NCBI RefSeq assembly: GCF_000143415.4
Contig: NW_003314548.1
Span: forward strand, 1-13,567
From: Selaginella moellendorffii
Taxonomy: Eukaryota > Plantae > Lycopodiophyta
DNA: 13,567 bases
Reading direction: 5' to 3'
Positions 2 to 13,567 of this stretch are shown here, one piece after another; positions within the stretch are counted from its first letter, which is position 1, and every line of letters begins with the position of its first letter. Made by a program: the position numbers and the translations under genes. The notes beneath the pieces were generated by a model. The model worked only from the letters and a program-made list of their open reading frames with translations, had not been told where the DNA came from and searched no databases.

Positions 2-1278
2 CTATCCACCGAAAATGATCAGGCTGACGAAGAGTTCCGGGTTGGTATCGTACATTATTTGTCCGAACGACTCTGATGGTTGCTGTGACTCTTTTTGCTT
101 TCTTTCAGGCCGAGATTAATCTCATGGGGCGAATTCATCATCCCAACTTAATAGCTCTTCTTGGTTTCAGCTCGCAAGGAGAAGACCGACTTCTCATTTA
201 TGAGTTGATGACAAATGGTTCACTGCAGGACCAGCTTCAAGGTGAGAGGACTGAGCTCCTCGTACCATTTCCTTTAACTTTGTGGCTTTCTCCAGGGCCT
301 GCCCAAGGAGCTGCTCTCACCTGGCATTTACGCCTCAAAATTGCCCTTGACGCAGCCAGGTTGGTTTCCAATTTGAACTTCGCTTTCCGGCATGACTTTG
401 TTTATTCGTAAAGTGCAGAGGACTTGAATACCTTCACGATCACTGCGATCCACCAGTCATCCACAGGGACTTTAAATCTTCTAATATACTCCTAGACGAA
501 GACTTCAATGCAAAGGTTCGTCGCCATGTCAATTCGAAGCTATATGTTTACATTTTCTTGCCTTGTTTGTTTACTTGCAGCTATCCGACTTTGGTCTTGC
601 TCTGATGGTACAAGAAGGCGCCGGCAGCCTTCAACTGCAAGGCACATTTGGCTACGTTGCTCCAGAATACATCCTCACTGGTCAAGCCTTGTGAATTTTT
701 TTATCTTTCTTTCGCTGTCACCTCACCTTCCTTTGAAAACGCAGGAATTCTCACGGAGAAGAGTGACGTCTATGCATTTGGCGTTGTGCTTCTGGAGCTC
801 ATCACCGGGAGAAAACCCATTGACGTCTCAATGCCAACAGGGTGCCAGTCGCTTGTGACATGGGTATGACGTCTCGAGATTTTCCTCTTGCGGAGACTTT
901 CTGTGTATCAACCTACTGCCACTTGCAGGCCACGCCGCAACTGACCGACCGCACCAGGCTTCCCCTCATTGTGGATGCTGCGATCAAGGATACTGTCAAC
1001 TTGAAGCAACTCTTCCAAGTAAGTGCGCTTCCTCTTTTCGGTTTTGGTTTGTTTGTTGCCAGTGCTGGCTGACTTGATGATTCTAACGCAAGATTTGTGT
1101 GTAGGTCGCTGCTGTTGCTGTTCTATGCGTCCAGTCGGAGCCAAGCTACAGGCCTTTGATTGGAGACGTGGTGAACTCTCTGATCCCGCTGGTCCCTTGC
1201 GAGCTGGGTGGTGCTTTGAGGGCGATTGATCCGTCAGGAGCCACTGCGGCAAACTCCCACTCCCAACACGGCGTGTAA
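2..1278 (+). CDS. Receptor-like (RLK/Pelle) protein kinase, At1g80640-like, 5'-partial. Exons 2-40, 109-241, 296-359, 419-515, 581-680, 745-863, 929-1018, 1105-1278
   Basis: Manual GT-AG splicing gives one continuous frame: [23 protein letters not shown]...[21 protein letters not shown]...[14 protein letters not shown]...KLSDFGLA...[10 protein letters not shown]...[17 protein letters not shown]...[39 protein letters not shown], stop TAA at 1276-1278. The C-terminal [22 protein letters not shown]...PLVPxELGG motif is typical of the At1g80640 group (from recall). Confidence 0.92.
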
Positions 1279-2402
1279 AACAAAGGATGTGAGTAACCAT
1301 GCGTAGAATGCAACAATTTTGTAGAGAAGCATGGCTATATGAATTATTCCAGCTTTAAATAAAGACTATTCTTAATTAATTCGCCTCTAATGCACTTAAA
1401 TTGGGGTTAGGGTACTTCGTCACCGTCGATCAAACGCGATCCCAACCGTCTATGTTTACCCGTTAGGGAGAAGCTAGGTCAAAAAATTGGCGAGCGATGG
1501 TGGCGTGCGAGTTTGGGGAGGACGACTGTGGTGAGCTCCTCAAGCTGTACAGGCGGGGCGAGAAGCTGGGTTCTGGCGGCCAAGGGCAAGTCTGTTTGTT
1601 GAGTGCTCGTTGCAGGGCTGGCAAGAAGTATGCGGGGAAATTGGTTGAATCGATGTGGAACGCCGAGAACGAAGCTCGGCTCATGTCCAAGCTTCGCGTC
1701 TGCCCTGGAGTCGTCGCCTTTGAGGATTTCGTGAGGGAGAGAGAAGGTGGGAGGTGCTATGGGACTATCGTTATGGAACTTTGCGGCCCTAGCTTGGCAG
1801 AGCGATTGATCCAGGGTGGGGCAGTGACTGAGGAAGAAGCAGCCAAGACTATCAAAACGCTAGCAGAGACACTCAAGTGGATGCACTCGAGAGGGGTCGT
1901 CCACCGCGATCTCAAGCCTCACAACATCTTTGAGAGGCTCAACGCCACTGCAGTGGACGAAGTGGTGATTGGAGATTTTGGCATGGCCACGGACAAGCAG
2001 TGGGATATGTGGCAGTACCGTGGAACAGCAAAGTACATGGCACCTGAGGTGGTAGCAGTGAAGAGTGATGGAGCTCGAGGACCACGAGCGAGCTACACAG
2101 AGGCCGTGGACGTGTGGGGGCTGGGAGTCATTGCGTACGAGCTGCTGAGAGGGTATCGAGCGGGAGTCGAATTTGATTTTCTGAGAGCAGGAGCATTCCT
2201 GAGTGGTTTTGCGTCGTGTGAAGCAGAGGATCTCATCCAGGGAATGCTAGCTGTGGAGCAGAGCAAGAGGGTGACTCTAGATGCCGTGCTTGCACATCCC
2301 TGGATTGTCAAGCATTGTGGTAGTGGGGAGGTCTTGGTGACAAGGGCAAATAGAAGGCACTGTGGAGTGAAAAGAAGATCTTCTGGCATTGGCAGGGATT
2401 TA
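932..2402 (+). repeat. Segmental duplication A, copy 1 (RLK last two exons, intergenic spacer, kinase). Copy 2 at 12116-13539
   Basis: Direct sequence similarity, e.g. caaggatactgtcaacttgaagcaactcttccaagtaagtgc and gagaagctaggtcaaaaaatt occur in both copies. Similarity ends at GRDL (2402) versus GKDL (13539). Confidence 0.95.
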
Positions 2403-2714: not shown

Positions 2715-3300
2715 CAAAGACGCCATCGTTACATACTGCGACATGAACTCTCGCCCAGACGAGGCCACGATCATGAGTGCACTCGCGGCGCCATCGGCTC
2801 TCACGGATTTTGACAATCCACACCCGAGCTTTTGAGCCACTCCAGCGATGGAGTCCGCACTCGCGAGCTTGCACGCCAAGTGTGGGATGCTGTTCGAGAA
2901 GAACCGTGAGAAGGATCTAGTCTCTAGGACGGTGGCAGTGTGCGCGCAGCCCAAGGCTCTCGCGCTGATCCACCGGATGGAGCTGGAGGGGATCTCCCCG
3001 AATGGAGTGACGCTGTCGGGGTGCTCTCATCGTGCTCCCACGCCGGGCTGTTCGAGCGGGGATGTTCTACGCGGGCCGCGAGCACGGGGTGGCGGTGGAG
3101 AGCGAGCACTACGGGTTTGTGGTGGAGCTGCGCCAGCAGTGTGGAGGCACTTCTCCGCAGTATGCCGCTGGAGCCGCGCTGTGGGTGACGCACACGAGGA
3201 GGTGAGCCCCGCGGACGATGTCGCCTGGGAGTTGGATCCCAGCGACGCTGCGTCTTACGTGCTCCTCGCCATGCATACTCAGCGCGGGAATTTTTGTGGT
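2715..3300 (+). pseudogene. PLS-class PPR(-E) gene 3' fragment, frameshifted
   Basis: Pieces in different frames: MNSRPDEATIMSALAA, ESALASLHAKCG...EKDLVS, ALALIHRMELEGISPNGVT, VLSSCSHAGLFERG, EALLRSMPLEP, ELDPSDAASYVLLA (E-domain-like). Confidence 0.85.
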
Positions 3301-3307
3301 CGGGGTT

Positions 3308-4633
3308 AAGTTCGCTCTCGTTCTCCAGACTTGTTTCGTTCTTCAGTGATTTGGGAAGGAAATAGAAAGCGAGTGTTATCTCCGCGGCCAGGAGACAAGG
3401 GTGTGGGGTCGTCTCAACGACTGGAAACAGACAAGAACTCGCAAGAGCGTCACGGTGCAGAAGATTCTTGTAAGTTTATAATTCGATTTTTCTTCTTTCG
3501 ACAACCTTTTCTGGACTGAGTAGGTCCATAAAATATTTATGTCTCTTATTCGGAACCCGAGCTGGAACCGAAGATTGTGCCTGGAGGAACTTCACATGAG
3601 AGAAGAACCCGAGCTGGAGTCTAAGATTGTGCCTGATACAGGTACTTCATGTGAGAGAAGAAGAACATAATTCACCAAATCTAGAGCATAAGTACAAATA
3701 GCTTCCTCATGAAATGCAGTGAGAATCTCATTTTTTCTTTTACCAGTGACAATTGGCGGCAGTCAGCAGTCATTGCTGGGATCCAACTCAGAAGAAAATC
3801 AAAACAACTCGGACTTGTTTGCCAGCATGATATCTCTGCTACTTCCAAATGCAGTCCCTCTCATGAAGAAACGTTCAAGAAGAAAACGGAGACAAGATCT
3901 CCCCAAAAGAGATGTGGCGGAAAGTCCTATAGGCTTTGGGATGGGTAATACCGCATTGGAGACCTCTGTAGCCAAAGACCCGATCGACCGAGGTGACACG
4001 ATGGCTATGACAACAAATATCTTTAACAATCAACGAAAAGCACCTACTGCCCTTGGACATAGCGTCGACAAGCAGCTTACCACCGCAGTTGAGCCTCAAG
4101 CTGGAGAGGAGTCCATTGCTGAAGAGCCGAACAACCAAGTTGACAATGCCAAAACATCTCAGCAACACAAAGAATATCGACGAGCACACACAATATGATG
4201 GCACAAACTTGATCAAGTCCTCGTCACCAACAGTCATAACTCGAATGAGCTTGAACAAGTCACGATGCAGCCCAGCTAGCTCTTTGAGGCTGTATAAAAG
4301 GATTCGATGATCACAACAGCCAACGCTTTGGACGACCATTGTGCTGATTTGGAGAGCAAGCGGTACATTATCTCGATACTCTTGAAAGGCTACCAGCGGA
4401 GCCTTTTGCTTGAAAGAAGAAGATGCGCAGAAGCAAAACAATGGTGGATGACTCTCTCACTCTGCTTTATCATATATGTGGCTATCCTACACCTGGATCA
4501 GTGATGTGGCAACTCATGCCACGCAGACTCTCATGTCAGCGTATATCTCCAACACTGCTGACGAAAAGTTCCAGGATGGACATGTCAAGTCACTTGATGC
4601 AGCGTACATGAGAGACAGTTGAATATGGAACAC
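3308..4633 (+). pseudogene. Truncated, frameshifted duplicate of exons 4-6 of the FYR-WD40 gene
   Basis: Near-identical to 7118-8313. It lacks the start and FYR exons (equivalent of about 6513-7117 deleted), has small indels and premature stops, carries a 144-bp insertion, and ends at 4633. Confidence 0.9.
4411..4554. mobile_element. Short solo LTR (144 bp; Copia- or TRIM-like) with 5-bp target site duplication
   Basis: Insertion relative to the paralogous empty site (8231 ccttCTGCTgacg). It begins TG(aaag) and ends (ctccaa)CA, and is flanked by TTGCT (4406-4410) and CTGCT (4555-4559). Confidence 0.8.
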
Positions 4634-5299: not shown

Positions 5300-6480
5300 G
5301 CGCTAGAGCGCTGGAGAGGAAGAGCCTGGTGGCCTGGAACACAATGATCGCGGATTATGCCCAGAGAGGTCAGCGGCGGAGGCCCAGGAGGTGTTCGAGG
5401 AGCCGGATGGATTTACTTTCGCATGCCCGGATTGCCGCGGCGCTCCTCGCTCGCGCTTGATCATGGACACGGCGCTGGTGGCGGCTTTCCAATTCCCAGA
5501 TCATTCCACCACCTGCACACCACACCACGAAAGCAATCCATGAGAACACTTGGGCGATGCCGCGGGGGTGTTTGAGAGAATGGATGTTCGTGACACAGTC
5601 GCGTGGAATGCATTTGCCGAGGCGACAGATCTAGATCGCGCACTGGAATGCTACCAGAGATCCACCTGTAAGCCCAATGGGATCACTTATGCTCGCTGCC
5701 TGCAGCGATCGTGGTGATCTTGGTCACGGCCGGCGCCTTCTCACTGACGCCCAGGATCGAGGGCTCTATCCCGATCGATTCGTGCAAAGCACGGCGGTGG
5801 CGATGCTAGATCTGCGAGGCCAGGAAATTGCTGGGCGAGGCCAAGATCGTTGCCTGGAACGCGATGATCTCGCCCAGTTGGGGCATTTGCATGAAGCTCT
5901 GGAAACTGACCGGGAGATGGAACACGATGGCTCCAGCAGCCCCGATCTCTTCACCTTTGCAAGCGCTCTAGCCGCCGCAGCCGGGCTTGGAGATCTAGAC
6001 ACCGGGAAGGCGATCCACGAGAGAATGGCGGCAGACAGATCGCTCAAGCTCGACGTCTTCTCCAACTGTGGGAGCTTGAGCCATGCCAAGCTCGTGTTCG
6101 ATCGCATCCCGGACAAGGTCGCAGTCTCCTGGAACTCGATGATCTCGACCTACGTGCGCCACGGCCGCTACAAAGACGCCATCGCCACGTACCGCGCCAT
6201 GGACTCTCGCCCAGACGAAGCCACCATCGTGAGCGCGCTCGCGGCAGCGTCGGCTCTCGCGGATCTACGGCAAGGACCACGCTCTCGAGCTAGGAATCGC
6301 CACTCCAGCGGTGGAGTCCGCGCTCGCAAGCTTGCACGCCAAGTGTGGAAGCCTGGACGCGCTGTTCGAGAAGAACCGGGAAGGATCTAGTGGGAGGCTG
6401 GGCGAGGCCGAGGCGGTGCCCCGCTGATGCCGCTGGAGCGGTGACGCTGGTGGCCGCTTGCGTGCTACGCGAGGAGGGGC
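5300..6480 (+). pseudogene. PLS-class PPR gene, multiply frameshifted and internally deleted
   Basis: EKSLVAWNTMIADYAQRG, ARGVFERMD..DTVAWNA, PDLFTFASALAAAAGLGDLDTGKAIHE, CGSLSHAKLVFDRIPDKVAVSWNSMISTYVRHGRYKDAI, PDEATIVSALAA occur in changing frames with stops. Confidence 0.88.
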
Positions 6481-6483
6481 TAT

Positions 6484-6517
6484 TTTGGCGGGAAGTTTTG
6501 TGGTCGGGGTTAGGGTT
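6484..6517 (+). promoter_or_regulatory. E2F consensus site (TTTGGCGG) plus telo-box-like TTAGGGTT immediately upstream of the FYR-WD40 ATG
   Basis: TTTGGCGG at 6484-6491 fits the plant E2F consensus WTTSSCSS; ttagggtt at 6510-6517; ATG at 6534. Confidence 0.5.
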
Positions 6518-6533
6518 CTAGGCTGAGGCGAGG

Positions 6534-9500
6534 ATGGGGAAAGTGGCGGCAGTGCGGCAGCAATCGGTGGAGATCGAGGCCCTTGGATCGCTTTTCCAGG
6601 GCCCGTGGGAGAAGAGGTACTGGAGCAGCTCTCGGGTGAGGGATTTCTCTGGAATGTAGCTGCTGTTTTGTTGATTTTGGGAAGAATGCGAGCAGGGAAA
6701 GAAGCGGTACCCTTTTCCTGTGGGATACAGAGCTCTGGCGAGGAAGGGAGGCGAGACATACGCGATGGAAATCCGAGCGGATAAGCTCGGGCCTTTGTTT
6801 GCGGTGAGTTTTTGCCTTTTCGGTTTTCTTGCGCTTTTCTTGATGGAAACTTTCAAGGTACGCTGCGGGGAGATTGAAAGCACGGGTCCATCAGCGAATG
6901 CCGCTTGGGAAGCGATGATGAAAATCCAGCATCCAGGAACTCGTTCTCTTGGAGGCAATGGCGAGAAGGTAATTGTTCTTTTCTTGTCTTTGTCTCCATT
7001 GCAAAAAATAATTCTATCTGGGCAGATGTTTGGCTTTGCAGATCCTGTTGTGCAGTATCTCCTACGTGAACTAGTTTCTGCTTCATCGAAAAAAGACGAG
7101 ACAGAAGTCAATGTGCAAAGTTCGCCCAGCTGTCGTTCTCCAGACGTGTTTCGTACTTCAGTGATTCGGGAAGGAAATAGGAAGCGAGTGTTATCTCCGC
7201 GGCCAGGAGACAAGGGTGTGAGGTCGTCTCAACGGCTGAAAACAGACAAGAACTCGCAAGAGCGTCACGGTGGAGAAGATTCTTGTAAGTTTTTTATTCT
7301 ATTTTTCTTCTTTTGATAAACTTTTATGGACTGAGTAGGTCCAGAAAATGTTTATGTCTCGGATTCGGAACCCGAGCTGGAACCGAAGATTGTGCCCGAT
7401 ACTCTGGAGGAACTTCACATGAGAGAAGAACCCGAGCTGGAGTCTAAGATTGTGCCTGATACTCTGGAGGTACTTCACGTGAGAGAAGAACATAATTCAC
7501 CAGATCTAGAGTGTAAGTACAAATAGCTTCCTCATCAAATGCAGTGAGAATCTCATTTTTTCTTTCACCAGTGACAATCGGCACCAGTCAGCAGTCATTG
7601 CTGGGATCCAACTCAGAAGAAAATCAAAACAACTCGGACTTGTTTGCCAGCATGATATCTCTGCTACTTCCAAATGCCGTCCCTCTCATGAAGAAACGTT
7701 CAAGAAGAAAACAGAGACAAGATCTCTCCAAAAGAGATGTGGCGGAAAGTCCTATAGACTTCGGGATGGGTAACACGGCATTGGAGACCTCCGTAGCCAA
7801 AGACCCGATCAAGCAAGGTGACACGACGGCCATGACAACAAATATCTTTGACAACCAACAGAAAGCACCTACTGGCCTTAGAGTTCGCGTCGACAAGCAG
7901 CTTACCACCGCAGTTGAGCGTCAAGCTGGAGAGGAGTCCATTGCTGAAGAACCTAGCAACCAAGTTGACAACGCCGAAACATCTCAGCAAACAAAGAATA
8001 TCGACGAGCACACACAATGTGTTGGCGGAAACTTAATCGAGTCCTCGTCACCCATAGTCATCGTCAATAAGCTCGCGCTTGAACAAGTCACGACGCAGCC
8101 CAGCCAGCTCTTTGAGGCTGTACAAAAGGATTCGACGATCACAACGGCCAATGCTTTGGACGACCATTGTGCTGATTCGGAGAACAAGTGGTACATTATC
8201 TCGGATACTCTTGAAAGGCTACCAGCGGAGCCTTCTGCTGACGAAAAGTTCCAGGATGGACATGTCATGTCACTTGATGCAGCGTGCGTGACGGACAGTC
8301 GGATAAGGAACACTTCGGCCGAACAAGCTCCCAACAATGCTTTATACCCGAAGTCAATACCTTTCACAGGCGCTGGTTCCATGGACGTAATCGCGAACAA
8401 GCTGACTAGCCCGAATGAGCTTGAACAAGTCGCGGCGCAGCCCAGCCAGCTCTTGGTAAAGCAACTTGAGACTGTCGAAAAGAATTCGACGATCGCCGCA
8501 GGCAATGCTTTGGATGATTTGGACAACAAGCGGTACACCGGTTCGGATACACTTGAAAGGCTACCAGCGGAGCCTTCAGCTGAAGAAACGTGCCAGATTC
8601 TGGGAGATGTGGAGCTACTTGATCTAGAAAATCCAGCATACGTGGCGGACAGTCGAAGAGAAAACACTTCGACCGAACAAGAAAAGCATGCTTCCAACAA
8701 TGCTTCAGGCCACAATTCTGGGTCCATCAACGAACAAGAAGTATCGACTACGGATACGTGGACCAAAGTGCCGGAAGCTGATGAAAAGGATCCCGTAGCC
8801 AACGATTTGGACATGCAGTCGAGAGTATTTACCGGCTTTAGTTCCATCAGCAAGCGGCTTACTAGCTCGGACATGCTAAAACCCGTCGCTGCTTTTGAGC
8901 ACGAACTTTCAGTTCTTTGCGTGACACTCAACGCAAGGAGTCAGGAGGTGGATATCTGCGTCTCTTGTGGTCCTCTGGGGAAGCACGGTGTACAACTATA
9001 TGTATACCGTATTTCCCTTGACAACAACTTGCTATCGGAGGCGACGTTGCTACAGTCCTTTTCACTGGATTCTTACGAAAATTTTGGAACAGACTCTCTG
9101 AAGGTTTGTTCTGTGTTTCTTTCTATTTGACTTACATTATTTTCGCAGCAGCAAGCGGAGTTTGGAATTCAACTCACTCCAGACGGAGACAGCCTTCTGT
9201 TGCTGGGAACTTTTGCTGTTCATAGACCCCAGCTTCCCAGTCAGTCAAATATAGTGCGGGTGGTTTCTCTTGCTGAACGTGATCCGAAGGCCGAACTTTT
9301 TGCGAGTGCCGCAATGAGATGCCTTTTGATGACAGGACCTCTTTCTTTGGTCGCTGCTGGAGATAACGGTTGTATCAAAGAATGGCGCATGGATCCGTCT
9401 TGGAGGTAATCGCTTTTCATGTTTGTATTTCCTTGCATTAATCACGTCCTATTCAGGCATTCTCTGTATGAAACAGATCTCCCACCTGCAAGATATAACG

Positions 9501-10183
9501 ACAAGACTTTCCGGAGCATTTTAAAGCTAGCCATCGTTCCTCAAGCACCTTACCTTGTTCTTGGATGTGACGCGGATGGTTACTTTGCAATCTGGTATTT
9601 CTATCTTCGGTTTGCAGTCGTCCAAGAAACTCACTCTCTTCTCTTACATCTTACAGGAATATCTCCAAAAAACAGCTACTTTCTTCATGCCACATTTCAA
9701 GATATACTTTTTCAGACATTCATATCGTAGATCTTTCTTTGGTGGATGATTTCAGAGATCGAGACTACGATTGCTGTGCCTGTCTTCTGACCAATGTCAA
9801 GGACGATGCGAAACATCAGAACCACTGGAGAATGGCCCTGCTAGAGAATGATGCCTTGTTTGTTGGCAATGATCTTGCTAACAGGTATGAAAATCCACTG
9901 GAACTTTTTTGTCATAACATTCGATTGCAGAATATGCTCAGCAGCCGTCATGGGACCTTATGGGGTTGCTGGCACTGACGAGGGGCGAGTTTTTCTTTGG
10001 GAATTTTCCACCGGAAAAAGAGTGGTTGAAATGTTTGAACAAGGTATGAAATTCTTGATTTTCAAGTCGTCTCTTATGCAAGCGTGCAATGTAGAATCGA
10101 AAATCGTACAAGTGAAAACTACAACGTCGTCTCGTTTGCTGGCAACTGTTGGAGAGGATGGGCGTGTTGTTCTGTATGTGTAG
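6534..10183 (+). CDS. FYR (FYRN/FYRC)-domain plus C-terminal WD40 protein, At1g26330-like, candidate plant PALB2-like, about 1036 aa. Exons 6534-6635, 6696-6803, 6858-6968, 7026-7284, 7339-7512, 7572-9103, 9149-9405, 9457-9594, 9657-9884, 9931-10043, 10095-10183
   Basis: All ten introns are GT-AG with consistent phases; spliced length 3111 nt. N-terminus VEIEALGSLFQGPWEKRYWSSSRGKKRYPFPVGYRA...GPLF...AW...FGFADPVVQYLLREL is FYR-like. The middle is acidic and disordered. The C-terminus has WD-like strands (LVAAGDNGCIKEW, GYFAIWNISKK, AGTDEGRVFLWEFSTG, ATVGEDGRVVLYV*). Confidence 0.85.
7368..7487 (+). repeat. 60-bp in-frame tandem duplication (EPELEPKIVPDTLEELHMRE / EPELESKIVPDTLEVLHVRE)
   Basis: Units at 7368-7427 and 7428-7487. 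Also present, with deletions, in the pseudogene copy at about 3553-3660. Confidence 0.9.
8078..8680 (+). repeat. Diverged internal repeat of about 85 aa in exon 6 (8078-8326 and 8420-8680)
   Basis: LEQV..QPSQL...K.STI...NALDD...NK.Y..SDTLERLPAEPSA.E...DSR..NTS.EQ occurs twice. Confidence 0.85.
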
Positions 10184-10216
10184 GAGGTATGGCAATACAA
10201 GTTTGTAACTCTAGCT

Positions 10217-10650
10217 TCACTTTCCCTGAACTTTCAGTTCGGAATCTGAAAGGAGCGCTTCAGCAGCTCGTCTCCCTGACAGAATTGCTCCATCGAAAGT
10301 TGCTGAGACTCGATGATCTCCGCACAGGTACAAACCTGCATCAACTTTTGGTTCTTTCGAGAGGTTGGTCGGCGGAGTCTGATCGGGTTGAGCAAACAAG
10401 ATCCTGTATGTCTTCAAGTGCTGCCACTTCGCTACTGTTTCCCGCCCAGTCCATTCCTCACGCTCGGCATCTGAACTGGCGGAATATCTTCCGATCAATG
10501 TTACGGAGACGAGATCTTTTCCAGCAGGGGCGTATGAAGAGCAGACGGTGCTGGGAAAGCACATATTGTTGATGACTTTTGCCAGTGTTCTTGATTGGGG
10601 ATCTATCAGCAGAAAAATAGAGGCAGACAGTGCTGCGAGCAGGCCTATTG
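10217..10650 (-). pseudogene. C-terminal fragment of an FAD-dependent oxidoreductase (amine oxidase/protoporphyrinogen oxidase-like, At3g09580-like)
   Basis: RPARSTVCLYFSAD..[frameshift]..INNMCFPSTVCSSYAPAGKDLVSVTLIG...WQHLKTYRILFAQPDQTPP...GLYLCGDHRVSATFDGAILSGRRAAEALL*. The N-terminal GxGxxG region is absent and internal deletions are apparent. Confidence 0.85.
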
Positions 10651-11592: not shown

Positions 11593-12460
11593 ATGGCGGA
11601 GGAGACACCAGGCAGAGGCGCAGAGATGACAAACAAGGAACAAAACGCCAAGAATCACAGCAAAACCAGCACCACTAGCAGCACCAGAAGGCCGCCCTGG
11701 TGCCTGCACAGCGTCAAGAGCAACCTCCACCACCAACATCGAACGTTGTCCGACCACGAAGTGACATTGGCAGGACCCACAACCAACGAAGAGGAGACCA
11801 GAGGAGTGGCGATGCTGGTGGATACCAGAGATGAGAACGCCGAATTGACGGAGATGAACAACCGGGAACTCACGGTGTTGCAGTGCTCGGCTGCGGTTAT
11901 CATCGGTGTTCTTTGTGACGGTGTCAAGGTTTGCTCTTCCAAGAAGCTTTGATTTCTTTGACATGTTAAACGTGAGAATGTGTGTGCTCCAGGGATTGCA
12001 AGGCTGCTTGGAAGGCAGAAAAGCGGGCTATTCGTGGTGGACGCTCTTCAAATATTTTGTCGTTGCTGCTGGGCTCGTATTTTGTTTGCGTATCGTCATC
12101 TACATGCTGAAGAGGACGCCGGAGCTGAGTGATCGCACCAGTTTTACCCTCGTTGTGGATGCTGCGTTCAAGGATACTGTCAACTTGAAGCAACTCTTCC
12201 AAGTAAGTGCCCTTCCTCTTCTTCTTCTTTCGGTTTTGGTTTGTTTGTTGCCAGTGCTGGCTGACTTGATGATTCTAATGCAAGATCCGTGTGTAGGTCG
12301 CTGCTGCTGCTGTTCTATGGAGCCAAGCTACAGGCCTTTGATTGGAGACGTGGTGAACTCTCTGGTCCCGCTGGTCCCTTGTGAACGCTCTGATCGCGCT
12401 GGTGGTGCTTTGAGGGCGATTGATCCGGCAGGAGCCACTGCGGCACAACAGAGCGTGTGA
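11593..12460 (+). other. Putative chimeric ORF: unknown low-complexity exon (11593-11928) spliced to a transmembrane-helix exon fused in frame to duplicated RLK C-terminal sequence
   Basis: A phase-0 GT-AG intron at 11929-11992 (64 bp) joins ...VLCDGVK to GLQGCLEGRKAGYSWWTLFKYFVVAAGLVFCLRIVIYMLKR-TPELSDRTSF... No expression evidence. Confidence 0.35.
12116..12460 (+). pseudogene. Duplicate of the last two RLK exons with a 10-bp deletion
   Basis: Aligns to 932-1278. cgtccagtcg is missing near 12319, so normal splicing gives TGA at 12339-12341. Confidence 0.88.
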
Positions 12461-12633
12461 AACACAGGATGCATGCGTACAATTTTGTAGAGACAGATTC
12501 AAATAACGAATATCCTGAAATAAATTCAGGGTAGGGCTTCCGTCTTTACAAGATCGTCACCATCGATCAAACGCGGTTCCAGCCGTCGATTTGTACCCGT
12601 TAGCGAGAAGCTAGGTCAAAAAATTCGCGAGCG

Positions 12634-13567
12634 ATGGCGTGCGAGTTTGGGGAGGACGACTGTGGTGAGCTCCTCAAGCTGTACAGGCGGGGTAAGAAGC
12701 TGGGATCTGGCGGTGAAGGGCAGGTCTATTTGTTGAGTGCTCGTCGCAGGGCTGGCAAGAAGTATGCGGGGAAATCAGTCAAATCGATGCGGAATGCCGA
12801 GAATGAAGCTCGGCTCATGTCCAAGCTTCGTGTCTGCCCTGGAGTCGTCGCCTTTGAGGATTTCGTGAGGGAGAGAGAAGCTGGGAGGTGCTATGGGACT
12901 ATTGTTATGGAACTTTGCGGCCCTAGCTTGGCAGAGCGATTGATCCAGGGCGGGGCAGTGACTGAGGAAGAAGCAGCCAAGACTATTAAAACGCTGGCAG
13001 AGACACTTAAGTGGATGCACTTGAGAGGGGTTGTCCACCGCGATCTCAAGCCTCATAACATCTTTCAGAGGCTCAACACCAGTGCAGTGGACGAAGTGGT
13101 GATTGGAGATTTTGGCATGGCCACAGACAAGCAGTGGGATATGCAGCAGTATTGTGGAACAGCAAAGTACATGGCACCCGAGGTGGTAGCAGTGAAGAGT
13201 GATGGAGCCCGAGGACCACGGGCGAGTTACACAGCGGCCGTGGACGTGTGGGGGCTGGGAGTCATTGCATACGAGCTGCTGAGTGGGTATCGATCAAGAG
13301 TTGAATTTGATTTTCTGAGAGCCAGAGCATTCCCAAGTGATTTGGCATCGTGTGAAGCAGAGGATCTCATCCAGGGAATGCTAGCTGTGGAGCAGAGCAA
13401 GAGGGTGACTTTAGATGCCGTGCTTGCACATCCCTGGATCGTCAAGCATTGTGGTAGTGGGGAAATCTTAACAGCGATGCCATACAGGAGGAGGCATTGT
13501 GGAGTAAAGAGAAAGTTTTCTGGCATCGGTAAGGACTTGCACAGTTGGCAACGATCCAGGAGACCCA
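12634..13567 (+). CDS. Intronless CAMK-group Ser/Thr kinase, copy 2, 3'-partial (runs off the window; absent from the ORF track)
   Basis: ATG at 12634 opens MACEFGEDDCGELLKLYRRGKKLGSGGEGQVY...YAGK...HRDLKPHN...GDFG...YCGTAKYMAPE...DVWGLG...HPW...GIGKDLHSWQRSRRP with no stop up to 13567. Confidence 0.9.
   Translation, partial: MACEFGEDDCGELLKLYRRGKKLGSGGEGQVYLLSARRRAGKKYAGKSVKSMRNAENEARLMSKLRVCPGVVAFEDFVREREAGRCYGTIVMELCGPSLAERLIQGGAVTEEEAAKTIKTLAETLKWMHLRGVVHRDLKPHNIFQRLNTSAVDEVVIGDFGMATDKQWDMQQYCGTAKYMAPEVVAVKSDGARGPRASYTAAVDVWGLGVIAYELLSGYRSRVEFDFLRARAFPSDLASCEAEDLIQGMLAVEQSKRVTLDAVLAHPWIVKHCGSGEILTAMPYRRRHCGVKRKFSGIGKDLHSWQRSRRP

What the first reader, a model, noticed from the sequence alone, without database searches (positions are those of the whole stretch)
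6534..10183. FYR-domain plus terminal WD40 protein: candidate plant counterpart of PALB2 (BRCA2 partner) with a chromatin-associated N-terminus
Seen: an intact 11-exon gene that the ORF track shows only as unrelated fragments. It encodes an N-terminal FYRN/FYRC-like domain, a long acidic disordered linker with one hydrophobic-basic island (FASMISLLLPNAVPLMKKRSRRK), and a WD40-like propeller running to the very last residue (...AGTDEGRVFLWEFSTG...LLATVGEDGRVVLYV*). Established: animal PALB2 has a long disordered middle and a C-terminal WD40 domain closed by its last residues (...GTIAIWDLLLG...LLAGQKDGNIFVYHYS*), and FYR domains occur in chromatin proteins such as trithorax/MLL and plant JmjC demethylases. 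Inference: this is a plant homologous-recombination mediator that couples chromatin reading to BRCA2 loading. The upstream E2F site is consistent with this. The family may already have been linked to PALB2 in angiosperms; I cannot verify that.
Basis: partly seen in the sequence, partly recalled or inferred. Interest (0 to 1): 0.7.

Follow-up and report, generated by a model that had tools for sequence, protein, structure and literature searches.

The report
Plant FYR-WD40 gene, PALB2 link unproven
This is a real, expressed spikemoss gene for a conserved but unstudied plant nuclear protein with an FYR domain, a long floppy middle and a WD40 propeller; the proposed kinship with the human DNA-repair protein PALB2 is still an open, testable guess.

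Summary
Window 6534-10183 (+) of Selaginella moellendorffii carries an intact gene with 11 coding exons. Every intron is confirmed by spliced RNA contigs from four studies. The 1036-aa product equals RefSeq LOC9641062 isoform X1, annotated "uncharacterized protein".

- **FYR domain:** residues 8-128 fold as an FYR domain (VIA Z 11.0 to TBRG1 2WZO, next hit 4.4).
- **Linker:** residues 136-685 are acidic and disorder-prone, with a conserved island SMMxLLLPxAxPLL followed by a basic cluster.
- **Propeller:** residues 686-1036 model as a seven-bladed WD40 propeller that ends at the last residue.
- **Family:** it is the orthologue of Arabidopsis At1g26330 ("FYR C-terminal domain-containing protein"). 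I found the family in more than 100 angiosperms and found no functional study of it.
- **Promoter:** a proximal E2F core (TTCCCGC[C/G]) lies 50-112 bp before the ATG in all four species examined.

The PALB2 reading is not established. Pfam PALB2_WD40 hits none of 22 members, and family profiles do not retrieve PALB2 from the PDB. The island does not resemble PALB2's ChAM motif. By Foldseek E-value and VIA Z, PALB2 ties with many unrelated WD40 propellers (rank 17 and rank 9). It does give the best TM-score in the ESM-Atlas search and the best target-normalised TM-score in the PDB Foldseek list.

The gene is a reasonable candidate for experiment, not a demonstrated homologue.

The parts
6483..6495 (+). 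E2F-type site TTTTGGCGGGAAG (core TTCCCGCC on the other strand), 50 bp upstream of the ATG
   Evidence: The same core lies 50-112 bp upstream of the ATG in Arabidopsis, Phaseolus and Tetracentron orthologues. As a degenerate motif it is not enriched in the window itself (10 found, 13 expected).
6534..6635 (+). coding exon 1 (aa 1-34), start of the FYR domain
   Evidence: The junction 6635/6696 is seen in spliced contigs of X1, X4 and X11.
6696..6803 (+). coding exon 2 (aa 35-70), FYRN core GKKRYPFPVGY
6858..6968 (+). coding exon 3 (aa 71-107), FYR
7026..7284 (+). coding exon 4 (aa 108-194); the FYRC end MFGFADPVVQYLLRELV runs to about nt 7088, then the linker begins
   Evidence: Pfam FYRC on residues 67-126; 2WZO aligned to residues 8-128.
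7339..7512 (+). coding exon 5, acidic linker with two 60-nt (20-aa) tandem repeats at 7368-7487
   Evidence: (repeat family D5). A rare alternative donor near 7469 appears in one run only.
7572..9103 (+). coding exon 6 (aa 252-762): disordered linker, conserved island, first propeller blade
   Evidence: 100% identity to P0003 residues 253-762. Internal 342-nt-spaced repeat at 8173-8254 / 8515-8596 (family D10).
7637..7711 (+). conserved island DLFASMISLLLPNAVPLMKKRSRRK (aa 274-298): hydrophobic short motif plus a basic, NLS-like cluster
   Evidence: The regex for the motif matched 107 of 119 retrieved proteins, consensus SMMTLLLPQAIPLLKKASRKKKK. M279, L283, L284, P285, P289 and L290 are invariant in alignment A2.
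8873..10180 (+). coding region of the seven-bladed WD40 propeller (aa 686-1036, introns included)
   Evidence: AF2 pLDDT 81, pTM 0.81. Fold searches. Alignment with 21 angiosperm homologues.
9149..9405 (+). coding exon 7; NAGNAG acceptor, with the major form starting at 9152 (1035-aa isoform X2)
   Evidence: the 48-nt skip appears in all 4 runs and the 45-nt skip in 1..
9457..9594 (+). coding exon 8
9657..9884 (+). coding exon 9
9931..10043 (+). coding exon 10 (the one canonical-looking WD repeat, GTDEGRVFLWEFSTG)
10095..10183 (+). coding exon 11, last strand ...GRVVLYV and stop TAG at 10181-10183
10187..10237 (+). 51-nt GT..AG intron in the 3' UTR, 3 nt after the stop codon
   Evidence: The junction is seen in all four runs.

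Best explanation
The locus is the intact, transcribed Selaginella moellendorffii gene LOC9641062. It is the orthologue of Arabidopsis At1g26330 and a member of a conserved, functionally unstudied plant family annotated only as 'FYR C-terminal domain-containing protein' or 'DNA binding protein'. I found the family in a lycophyte and in more than 100 angiosperms.

Shown here:
- The protein has an N-terminal FYR module. This fold acts as a protein-protein docking unit in TBRG1/NIAM, KMT2/trithorax and plant JMJ14-type demethylases.
- A roughly 550-residue acidic, disorder-prone linker follows. It carries one conserved short motif (SMMxLLLPxAxPLL) and then a lysine/arginine cluster.
- A divergent seven-bladed WD40 propeller ends at the C-terminus.
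- A proximal E2F-type site sits upstream of the ATG in all four species examined.

Inferred mechanism:
- It is a nuclear scaffold made in proliferating, S-phase or DNA-damaged cells under E2F control.
- The basic cluster serves nuclear import and possibly DNA or nucleosome contact.
- The FYR module docks on a chromatin-associated partner.
- The propeller binds short peptide motifs of one or more client proteins and so brings them to chromatin.

Which clients it binds (BRCA2/RAD51-type repair factors, histone-modifying complexes or others) is unknown.
For: - Gene model and splicing.
- Identity with the RefSeq protein.
- Family: 113 proteins with E<=1e-3 to the spinach homologue's propeller, all from angiosperms and with the same architecture.
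- Selaginella aligns end to end with the angiosperm propeller (residues 687-1036 against 875-1286). Identity is 36-42% in the FYR domain.
- At1g26330 identity from gene neighbours.
- FYR fold.
- Propeller.
- Linker composition. Island conservation.
- E2F: the strict pattern TTTSSCGS occurs within 112 bp of the ATG in 3 of 4 species. The background rate is 0.13 per kb in the 86 kb held, giving P about 3e-5. The core TTCCCGC[C/G] is present in 4 of 4.
- The role of FYR domains as docking modules comes from established knowledge and PMC4659397 (abstract seen in the search listing; the paper itself was not opened).
Against: - There are no functional data for any family member. Full-text searches found only an incidental mention of At1g26330.
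- Nuclear localisation, E2F binding and partner binding are inferred, not shown.
- Pfam FYRN is not detected, and FYRC and the WD40 repeat are at or below the curated cut-offs. The domain calls therefore rest mainly on predicted structures built from a shallow 22-row alignment.
- In one run a contig covers 6400-6598 without a break, so the E2F site may lie inside the 5' UTR of some transcripts.
- The phyletic range outside angiosperms and Selaginella was not established. The last word search scored only the 8000 candidates sharing most words.
Confidence: 0.8

Rival explanations
1. The family is the plant counterpart of animal PALB2, either a true but very diverged orthologue or a functional analogue. 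In this reading the C-terminal propeller binds the N-terminus of BRCA2 (and RAD51 or its paralogues). The linker island and FYR domain tether the complex to chromatin, replacing PALB2's ChAM, MRG15 and coiled-coil contacts.
For: - Same overall layout: a long disordered middle and a roughly 330-350-residue divergent seven-bladed propeller ending at the C-terminus. The structural alignment covers model residues 7-357 against PALB2 854-1184, with 292 residues aligned, rmsd 3.8 and 15% identity.
- A PALB2 cluster (PF16756) gives the best TM-score, the longest alignment and the lowest rmsd in the ESM-Atlas fold search: 0.70/0.66, 305 residues, 3.6 A.
- 2W18 has the best target-normalised TM (0.70) in the Foldseek PDB list.
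- PALB2 is rank 9 of 48,161 representative chains by VIA Z, within 1 unit of the top.
- The conserved E2F promoter site fits a replication or repair gene.
- The literature reports BRCA1, BRCA2 and RAD51 in plants but no PALB2 (PMC9792525; bioRxiv 10.64898/2026.06.19.733317).
Against: - No sequence signal at all. PF16756 is not hit by any of 22 members at E<=1.
- Family profiles do not retrieve PALB2 from the PDB.
- Language-model neighbours are other propellers, even when canonical WD40 families are skipped.
- By Foldseek E-value (rank 17) and VIA Z, WDR91, SEC31A, beta'-COP, WDR26, Ski8 and G-beta match equally or better. The fold match is therefore generic.
- The N-terminus is an FYR domain, not PALB2's coiled coil.
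- The island HMM scores the human ChAM peptide at -1.6 bits, and 4976 of 5000 shuffles score at least as well.
- Ending at the C-terminus is common among WD40 proteins; the G-beta alignments, for example, run to residue 340.
Confidence: 0.15
2. The protein is a subunit or adaptor of a histone-methylation or transcription complex and has no direct role in recombination. The FYR domain would bind a transcription factor or a trithorax/JmjC-type partner, as the JMJ14 FYR domain binds NAC050/052. The propeller would bind histone tails or complex subunits, as WDR5, RbBP5 and Swd1 do.
For: - All characterised FYR proteins are chromatin or transcription regulators: TBRG1 and KMT2D are the best PDB hits to the FYR profile, and JMJ14 is described in PMC4659397 (abstract in the listing).
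- COMPASS propellers are among the top structural matches: 6ven_L at Z 25.1, and RbBP5, Swd1 and WDR5 at Z 23-23.5.
- E2F targets also include chromatin genes (established knowledge).
Against: These structural matches are as generic as the PALB2 one. I found no sequence link to any COMPASS or demethylase subunit and no experimental data.
Confidence: 0.25
3. The 11-exon model is an artefact: either two or more separate genes (an FYR gene and a WD40 gene), or a decayed pseudogene copy like its neighbours.
For: - The original JGI models in this region are fragmentary chimeras (P0001 is 343 aa, P0002 is 469 aa).
- The window and another scaffold hold truncated copies.
- No single RNA contig spans the whole gene.
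Against: - The reading frame is open through all 11 exons.
- Every junction, including exon 5-6 that links the halves, is present in spliced contigs of 3-4 independent studies.
- RefSeq models the same 1036-aa and 1035-aa products.
- The full architecture is colinear with more than 100 angiosperm proteins.
Confidence: 0.02

Closest known systems
Arabidopsis At1g26330 and its angiosperm orthologues ('FYR C-terminal domain-containing protein' / 'DNA binding protein'; uncharacterised)
   Same: Colinear architecture: an N-terminal FYR domain with KKYWSSSRGKDRYPYPVGY...FFGFKNPxVQRLLRELV, the island SMMxLLLPQAxPLLKxxSRKKK, and a C-terminal propeller ending ...GQLLVY within 0-15 residues of the end in most members. 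A proximal E2F core precedes the ATG.
   Different: - Selaginella is shorter (1036 aa against roughly 1000-1500 aa).
- Identity is only 23-29% in the propeller.
- It lacks the cysteine-rich loop (PxCR...CxCxxC) and a roughly 40-60-residue insertion between later blades, both of which the angiosperm proteins carry.
- Its linker has lineage-specific tandem repeats.
Human PALB2 (WD40 domain, PDB 2W18/3EU7; Pfam PF16756)
   Same: A long disordered middle and a divergent seven-bladed propeller at the extreme C-terminus. The structures superpose over 292-305 residues (TM 0.61-0.70, Z 23.8, 13-15% identity).
   Different: No detectable sequence or profile similarity. The structural match is no better than to unrelated WD40 proteins by E-value or Z. 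The plant protein has an FYR domain where PALB2 has a coiled coil. The ChAM motif is not matched. BRCA2 binding is untested.
TBRG1/NIAM FYR domain (PDB 2WZO); FYRN/FYRC of KMT2/trithorax and plant JMJ14-type demethylases
   Same: One contiguous FYRN+FYRC module. 2WZO is the only significant structural match (Z 11.0, 114 residues aligned, rmsd 3.1, 18% identity) and the best sequence-profile hit in the PDB.
   Different: Here the FYR domain sits at the extreme N-terminus and is combined with a WD40 propeller, not with SET, JmjC or PHD domains. Pfam FYRN is not detected and FYRC is only at the threshold.
Generic seven-bladed WD40 scaffolds (WDR91, SEC31A, beta'-COP, G-beta, WDR5, Ski8)
   Same: Same fold with Z 23-25.6. 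The last repeat, GTDEGRVFLWEFSTG, is a recognisable WD repeat.
   Different: Only one repeat is recognisable by sequence, and no Pfam propeller family reaches its cut-off.

Membership tests
At1g26330 family (plant FYR-linker-WD40 proteins) | Full-length colinear similarity: FYR at the N-terminus, the conserved island, and a propeller at the C-terminus | tested here: met
   P0003 aligns to the spinach, Arabidopsis and other proteins in all three regions. The profile of the 8-row alignment scores it at 979 bits.
FYR domain (FYRN PF05964 + FYRC PF05965) | Pfam FYRC match at or above the gathering score | tested here: met
   22.1 bits against a cut-off of 21 on P0003:1-140. On the whole protein it scores 17.6 bits, below the cut-off.
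FYR domain (FYRN PF05964 + FYRC PF05965) | Pfam FYRN match | tested here: not met
   No FYRN hit at E<=1. The FYRN core YPxGY is nevertheless aligned to TBRG1 and KMT2D by the family profile.
FYR domain (FYRN PF05964 + FYRC PF05965) | The single alpha+beta FYR fold spanning both halves | tested here: met
   AF2 model against 2WZO: Foldseek E 3.7e-4 with probability 1.00, and VIA Z 11.0 over residues 8-128 with the next hit at Z 4.4.
WD40 beta-propeller | Closed seven-bladed propeller fold | tested here: met
   AF2 pLDDT 81, pTM 0.81. VIA Z is 24.0 or more to all 50 listed entries in the second-look search, all WD40-type propellers.
WD40 beta-propeller | Pfam WD40 repeat or a specific propeller family at the gathering score | tested here: not met
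   WD40 PF00400 scores 19.1 bits against a cut-off of 27. All propeller families are far below their cut-offs.
PALB2 | Match to Pfam PALB2_WD40 (PF16756) | tested here: not met
   It is not among the 16 families listed for the Selaginella propeller, and not among the 25 of 39 families shown for the 22 members (14 families were not shown), at E<=1.
PALB2 | Sequence-profile similarity of the propeller to solved PALB2 (2W18/3EU7) | tested here: not met
   Profile A1: PALB2 is not in the best 60 of 167 hits, all of which are driven by the last WD repeat. Profile A3, without that repeat: 3 weak generic hits and no PALB2 at E<=10. A profile-profile search (HHsearch) could not be run because no PALB2 alignment was obtainable.
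PALB2 | Structural similarity to the PALB2 propeller clearly above other WD40 families | tested here: inconclusive
   PALB2 has the best TM in the ESM Atlas search (0.70) and the best TMt in Foldseek PDB (0.70). It is only rank 17 by Foldseek E-value, is outside the 50 entries listed in the second-look VIA search (whose lowest Z is 24.0), and is rank 9 (Z 23.8 against 24.8) in the wide VIA search.
PALB2 | N-terminal coiled coil (BRCA1 binding and self-association) | tested here: not met
   Residues 8-128 are an FYR domain. No dedicated coiled-coil prediction was run on the linker.
PALB2 | ChAM chromatin-association motif | tested here: not met
   An HMM built from 93 non-redundant family island sequences was scored against the human ChAM peptide printed in PMC9671498. 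It scored -1.6 bits, and 4976 of 5000 shuffles scored at least as well.
PALB2 | Binding of the BRCA2 N-terminal WFxxL peptide, RAD51 and RAD51C by the propeller; MRG15 binding | not testable with these tools

The most novel reading that the evidence does not exclude
The At1g26330 family, including this Selaginella gene, is the long-missing plant PALB2: an ancient BRCA2 partner whose propeller has diverged beyond sequence recognition. In plants an FYR domain and a basic island would have replaced the coiled coil and ChAM as chromatin and BRCA1 tethers. That would push the origin of the BRCA1-PALB2-BRCA2 axis back to before the plant-animal split.
Probability: 0.13. Interest if true: 0.85.

Novelty: new member of a known kind. 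Interest (0 to 1): 0.45.

Why it matters
Plants have BRCA1/BARD1, BRCA2, RAD51 and MRG proteins. Papers up to 2026 still state that PALB2 has no plant homologue and is not recognisable outside vertebrates (PMC9792525; bioRxiv 10.64898/2026.06.19.733317). How plant BRCA2 reaches damaged chromatin is therefore open.

This work defines a conserved, E2F-linked, apparently single-family nuclear scaffold whose propeller is at least as PALB2-like as any other solved propeller. It also names the Arabidopsis gene (At1g26330) for which mutants can be tested.

Even if the PALB2 idea fails, the family is a conserved, unstudied FYR protein with a new domain combination, and it is likely to act in chromatin biology of dividing plant cells.

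The negative results matter too. Architecture and a terminal WD40 repeat alone do not identify PALB2.

Tried and rejected
1. **Pfam on single exons**: nothing useful, because the exons are too short.
2. **Word search with exon 6**: found only the fragmentary JGI models P0001 and P0002. This revealed the partial duplicates but no full-length relative, because of the tool's length window.
3. **PDB phmmer with exon pieces and with the whole propeller**: only generic WD40 hits through the last repeat.
4. **ChAM idea.** By eye, LLFPAEYYVRTTR (human) resembles LLLPNAVPLMKKR. It scored no better than shuffles, so I rejected it.
5. **Language-model neighbours**, with and without canonical WD40 families: no PALB2 and no informative family.
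6. **Last word search with a full-length profile**: only the 8000 candidates sharing most words were scored. It added the RefSeq names and a 97%-identical second Selaginella locus, but no bryophyte, fern, gymnosperm or algal members. The family's range remains open, and a blank here is not evidence of absence.
7. **E2F motif enrichment within the window**: not enriched as a degenerate motif. Only the positional conservation across species is informative.
8. **Bacterial-type promoter and terminator scan**: irrelevant for a plant gene and empty.
9. **Exact-sequence look-ups** of the Vitis, Typha, rice and second Selaginella proteins found no contig, so the promoter comparison rests on four species.
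10. **Profile-profile comparison with PALB2** could not be done, because no tool returned PALB2 sequences as usable records.

Full report
**What is there**

The window comes from Selaginella moellendorffii. Proteins encoded in it carry NCBI names from that species.

Reading window 6000-10600, I derived a plus-strand model by choosing GT..AG introns that keep one frame open. It has 11 coding exons: 6534-6635, 6696-6803, 6858-6968, 7026-7284, 7339-7512, 7572-9103, 9149-9405, 9457-9594, 9657-9884, 9931-10043 and 10095-10183. The stop codon is at 10181-10183 and the product is 1036 aa.

I searched exon by exon by reference. The exhaustive search with exon 6 then returned a database protein, P0003, of 1036 aa. 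It is identical to my model and is named 'uncharacterized protein LOC9641062 isoform X1' by NCBI. From then on I used P0003 by reference.

**Expression and splicing**

Contigs of four public runs from four different studies were laid on 6400-10300. They are recorded only as 'RNA?', but they carry clean GT..AG deletions and so are spliced RNA.
- All ten coding introns are seen, including the exon 5/6 junction that links the FYR half to the WD40 half.
- At intron 6 the acceptor 3 nt downstream (NAGNAG) is the commoner one. It gives the 1035-aa isoform X2 (P0120).
- A twelfth, non-coding exon follows a 51-nt intron at 10187-10237, just after the stop codon.
- Two non-canonical joints and one alternative donor inside exon 5 are rare and probably unproductive.
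- No single contig spans the gene, so a single full-length mRNA is strongly implied but not directly shown.

**Domains**

*N-terminus.*
- Pfam FYRC reaches its cut-off on residues 1-140 (22.1 bits against 21). FYRN is not detected.
- A 22-row family alignment (A4) finds the FYR domains of TBRG1 (2WZO) and KMT2D as its two best PDB hits. The alignment runs from YPVGY to FFGF..VQRLL.
- The AF2 model (pLDDT 77) has one significant Foldseek match, 2WZO 'the structure of the FYR domain', at E 3.7e-4.
- The wide VIA search gives Z 11.0 to 2WZO with the next hit at 4.4.
- The FYR assignment is therefore solid.

*Linker.* Residues 136-685 have net charge -38 and 62% disorder-promoting residues. They contain lineage-specific tandem repeats. 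The only part conserved with angiosperms is the island at residues 274-298, with family consensus SMMTLLLPQAIPLLKKASRKKKK.

*C-terminus.* Residues 680-1036 were folded with 21 angiosperm homologues (A1). The result is a confident all-beta model (pLDDT 81, pTM 0.81) whose last strand is residues 1031-1035. All fold searches show a seven-bladed WD40 propeller.

**Family**

The spinach homologue P0006, found by the exhaustive search, recovered 113 full-length angiosperm proteins with the same three-part layout. Where named, they are called 'FYR C-terminal domain-containing protein' or 'DNA binding protein'.

The Arabidopsis member P0080 lies between an ADH_N_2 gene and a cytochrome b5 gene.

Full-text searches found no functional study of the family. 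At1g26330 is mentioned once, as the site next to a control T-DNA insertion.

**Promoter**

The E2F-type site TTTTGGCGGGAAG lies 50 bp before the Selaginella ATG.
- Arabidopsis has the palindrome TTTCCCGCGAAA at about -110.
- Phaseolus has TTTCCCGCC at -67.
- Tetracentron has GTTCCCGCC at about -100.
- The strict pattern occurs at 0.13 per kb in the 86 kb of sequence held. Three of four species having it within 112 bp of the ATG has a probability of about 3e-5.

This is the best new evidence that the family is tied to proliferation, S phase or the DNA-damage response. E2F targets include many replication, repair and chromatin genes, so the site does not point to recombination specifically.

**The PALB2 question**

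*Sequence level: negative throughout.*
- PF16756 is not matched.
- The family profile retrieves only generic WD40 proteins through its one canonical repeat.
- With that repeat removed, it retrieves nothing meaningful.
- Language-model neighbours are other propellers.
G.dG.v.vY) is the ordinary WD-repeat signature. The same piece matches designed WD40 proteins, coatomer beta' and WDR5.

*Structure level: mixed.*
- Foldseek ranks 2W18 17th by E-value, although with the best target-normalised TM (0.70).
- The second-look VIA search puts WDR91, a COMPASS subunit, SEC31A and G-beta on top. PALB2 falls outside the 50 entries listed, whose lowest Z is 24.0.
- The wide VIA search over 48,161 representatives puts 3EU7 ninth at Z 23.8. 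It covers PALB2 854-1184, that is the whole domain, and is within about one Z unit of the top (24.8).
- The ESM-Atlas fold search gives a PALB2 cluster the best TM (0.70/0.66), the longest alignment and the lowest rmsd of the ten rows.

In short, PALB2 is in the top tier of several hundred propeller families but does not stand out from it.

*Other PALB2 features.* They are absent or unsupported. The N-terminus is FYR, not a coiled coil. The island does not match the ChAM peptide from PMC9671498 any better than shuffled peptides do. BRCA2 binding could not be examined.

I therefore rate 'functional or evolutionary counterpart of PALB2' at roughly 0.13-0.15. It is worth testing because the literature still lists PALB2 as missing from plants, but it is not supported as a finding.

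**Best reading**

The gene encodes a conserved plant nuclear scaffold.
- The FYR domain is a protein-docking module.
- The island is a short motif plus an NLS-like basic cluster.
- The propeller is a peptide-binding platform.
- Expression is probably under E2F control.

The architecture, expression and conservation are shown. The localisation, the partners and the process it serves are inferred.

**Surroundings**

The locus sits in a segmentally duplicated patch.
- Window 2715-4633 is a truncated, diverged copy of 6171-8313, covering a PPR fragment plus exons 4-6. The JGI model SELMODRAFT_432385 (P0001) was built on it.
- Scaffold GL377696.1 (L001) holds another copy. It has an internal deletion joining residue ~287 to ~795 and a truncated end (SELMODRAFT_448714).
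- A 97%-identical full-length locus (LOC9649453) on a 1.1-Mb scaffold is probably the other haplotype.
- A kinase gene lies upstream, with a repeated fragment downstream. A degenerate PPR ORF lies directly upstream. A convergent amine-oxidase gene overlaps the 3' UTR.

Noticed in passing
window 2715-4633 (compare 6171-8313): A truncated, 84-95% identical direct duplicate of the PPR fragment plus exons 4-6 of the gene lies 3.8 kb upstream. It has no FYR exons 1-3 and no propeller. The JGI model SELMODRAFT_432385 (P0001, 343 aa) is a chimera built on it.
   Followed up: partly
L001 7696-9175 (GL377696.1): A second decayed copy (SELMODRAFT_448714, P0002). The FYR exons and the start of exon 6 are present. 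A deletion then joins residue ~287 to ~795, and the copy stops after residue ~906. It too is preceded by a protein kinase gene, so the kinase-FYR/WD40 block was duplicated as a unit.
   Followed up: partly
window 932-1800 and 12116-12934: About 0.9 kb of the upstream protein-kinase gene region is repeated at 89-97% identity, 11.1 kb downstream (families D2, D6, D7, D9, D13; kinase Pfam hits).
   Followed up: no
window 10187-10300 versus minus-strand ORF 10217-10564: After its 51-nt UTR intron, the 3' UTR of the gene runs into the last coding exon of a convergent flavin amine-oxidase gene (Pfam Amino_oxidase, E 4e-8). The two transcripts overlap tail to tail by at least ~65-80 nt.
   Followed up: no
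window 9104-9151: A NAGNAG acceptor at intron 6. The 48-nt skip (exon 7 from 9152, minus one Gln) is in all four runs and the 45-nt skip is in one. These correspond to RefSeq isoforms X2 and X1.
   Followed up: yes
alignment A1 columns ~122-140 (angiosperm homologues, e.g. P0021 about residues 845-870): Angiosperm propellers carry a nearly invariant cysteine-rich loop, P-x-C-R-x(7-8)-C-x-C-x-x-C, which looks like a zinc knuckle. One member even matches Pfam zf-FLZ (E 1.2e-4). Selaginella lacks the loop entirely.
   Followed up: no
window 5677-6390: A 237-aa ORF with PPR repeats (PPR_2 E 5e-10) lies directly upstream. It looks degenerate, and one run has a contig running unbroken from 6400 into exon 1. 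The 5' end of the gene and possible read-through from upstream are therefore unresolved.
   Followed up: no
window 7368-7487 and 8173-8254 / 8515-8596: Lineage-specific tandem duplications inside the disordered linker: two 20-aa units, EPELE(P/S)KIVPDTLEE(L/V)H(M/V)REE, and a pair of repeats spaced 342 nt (114 codons) apart.
   Followed up: no
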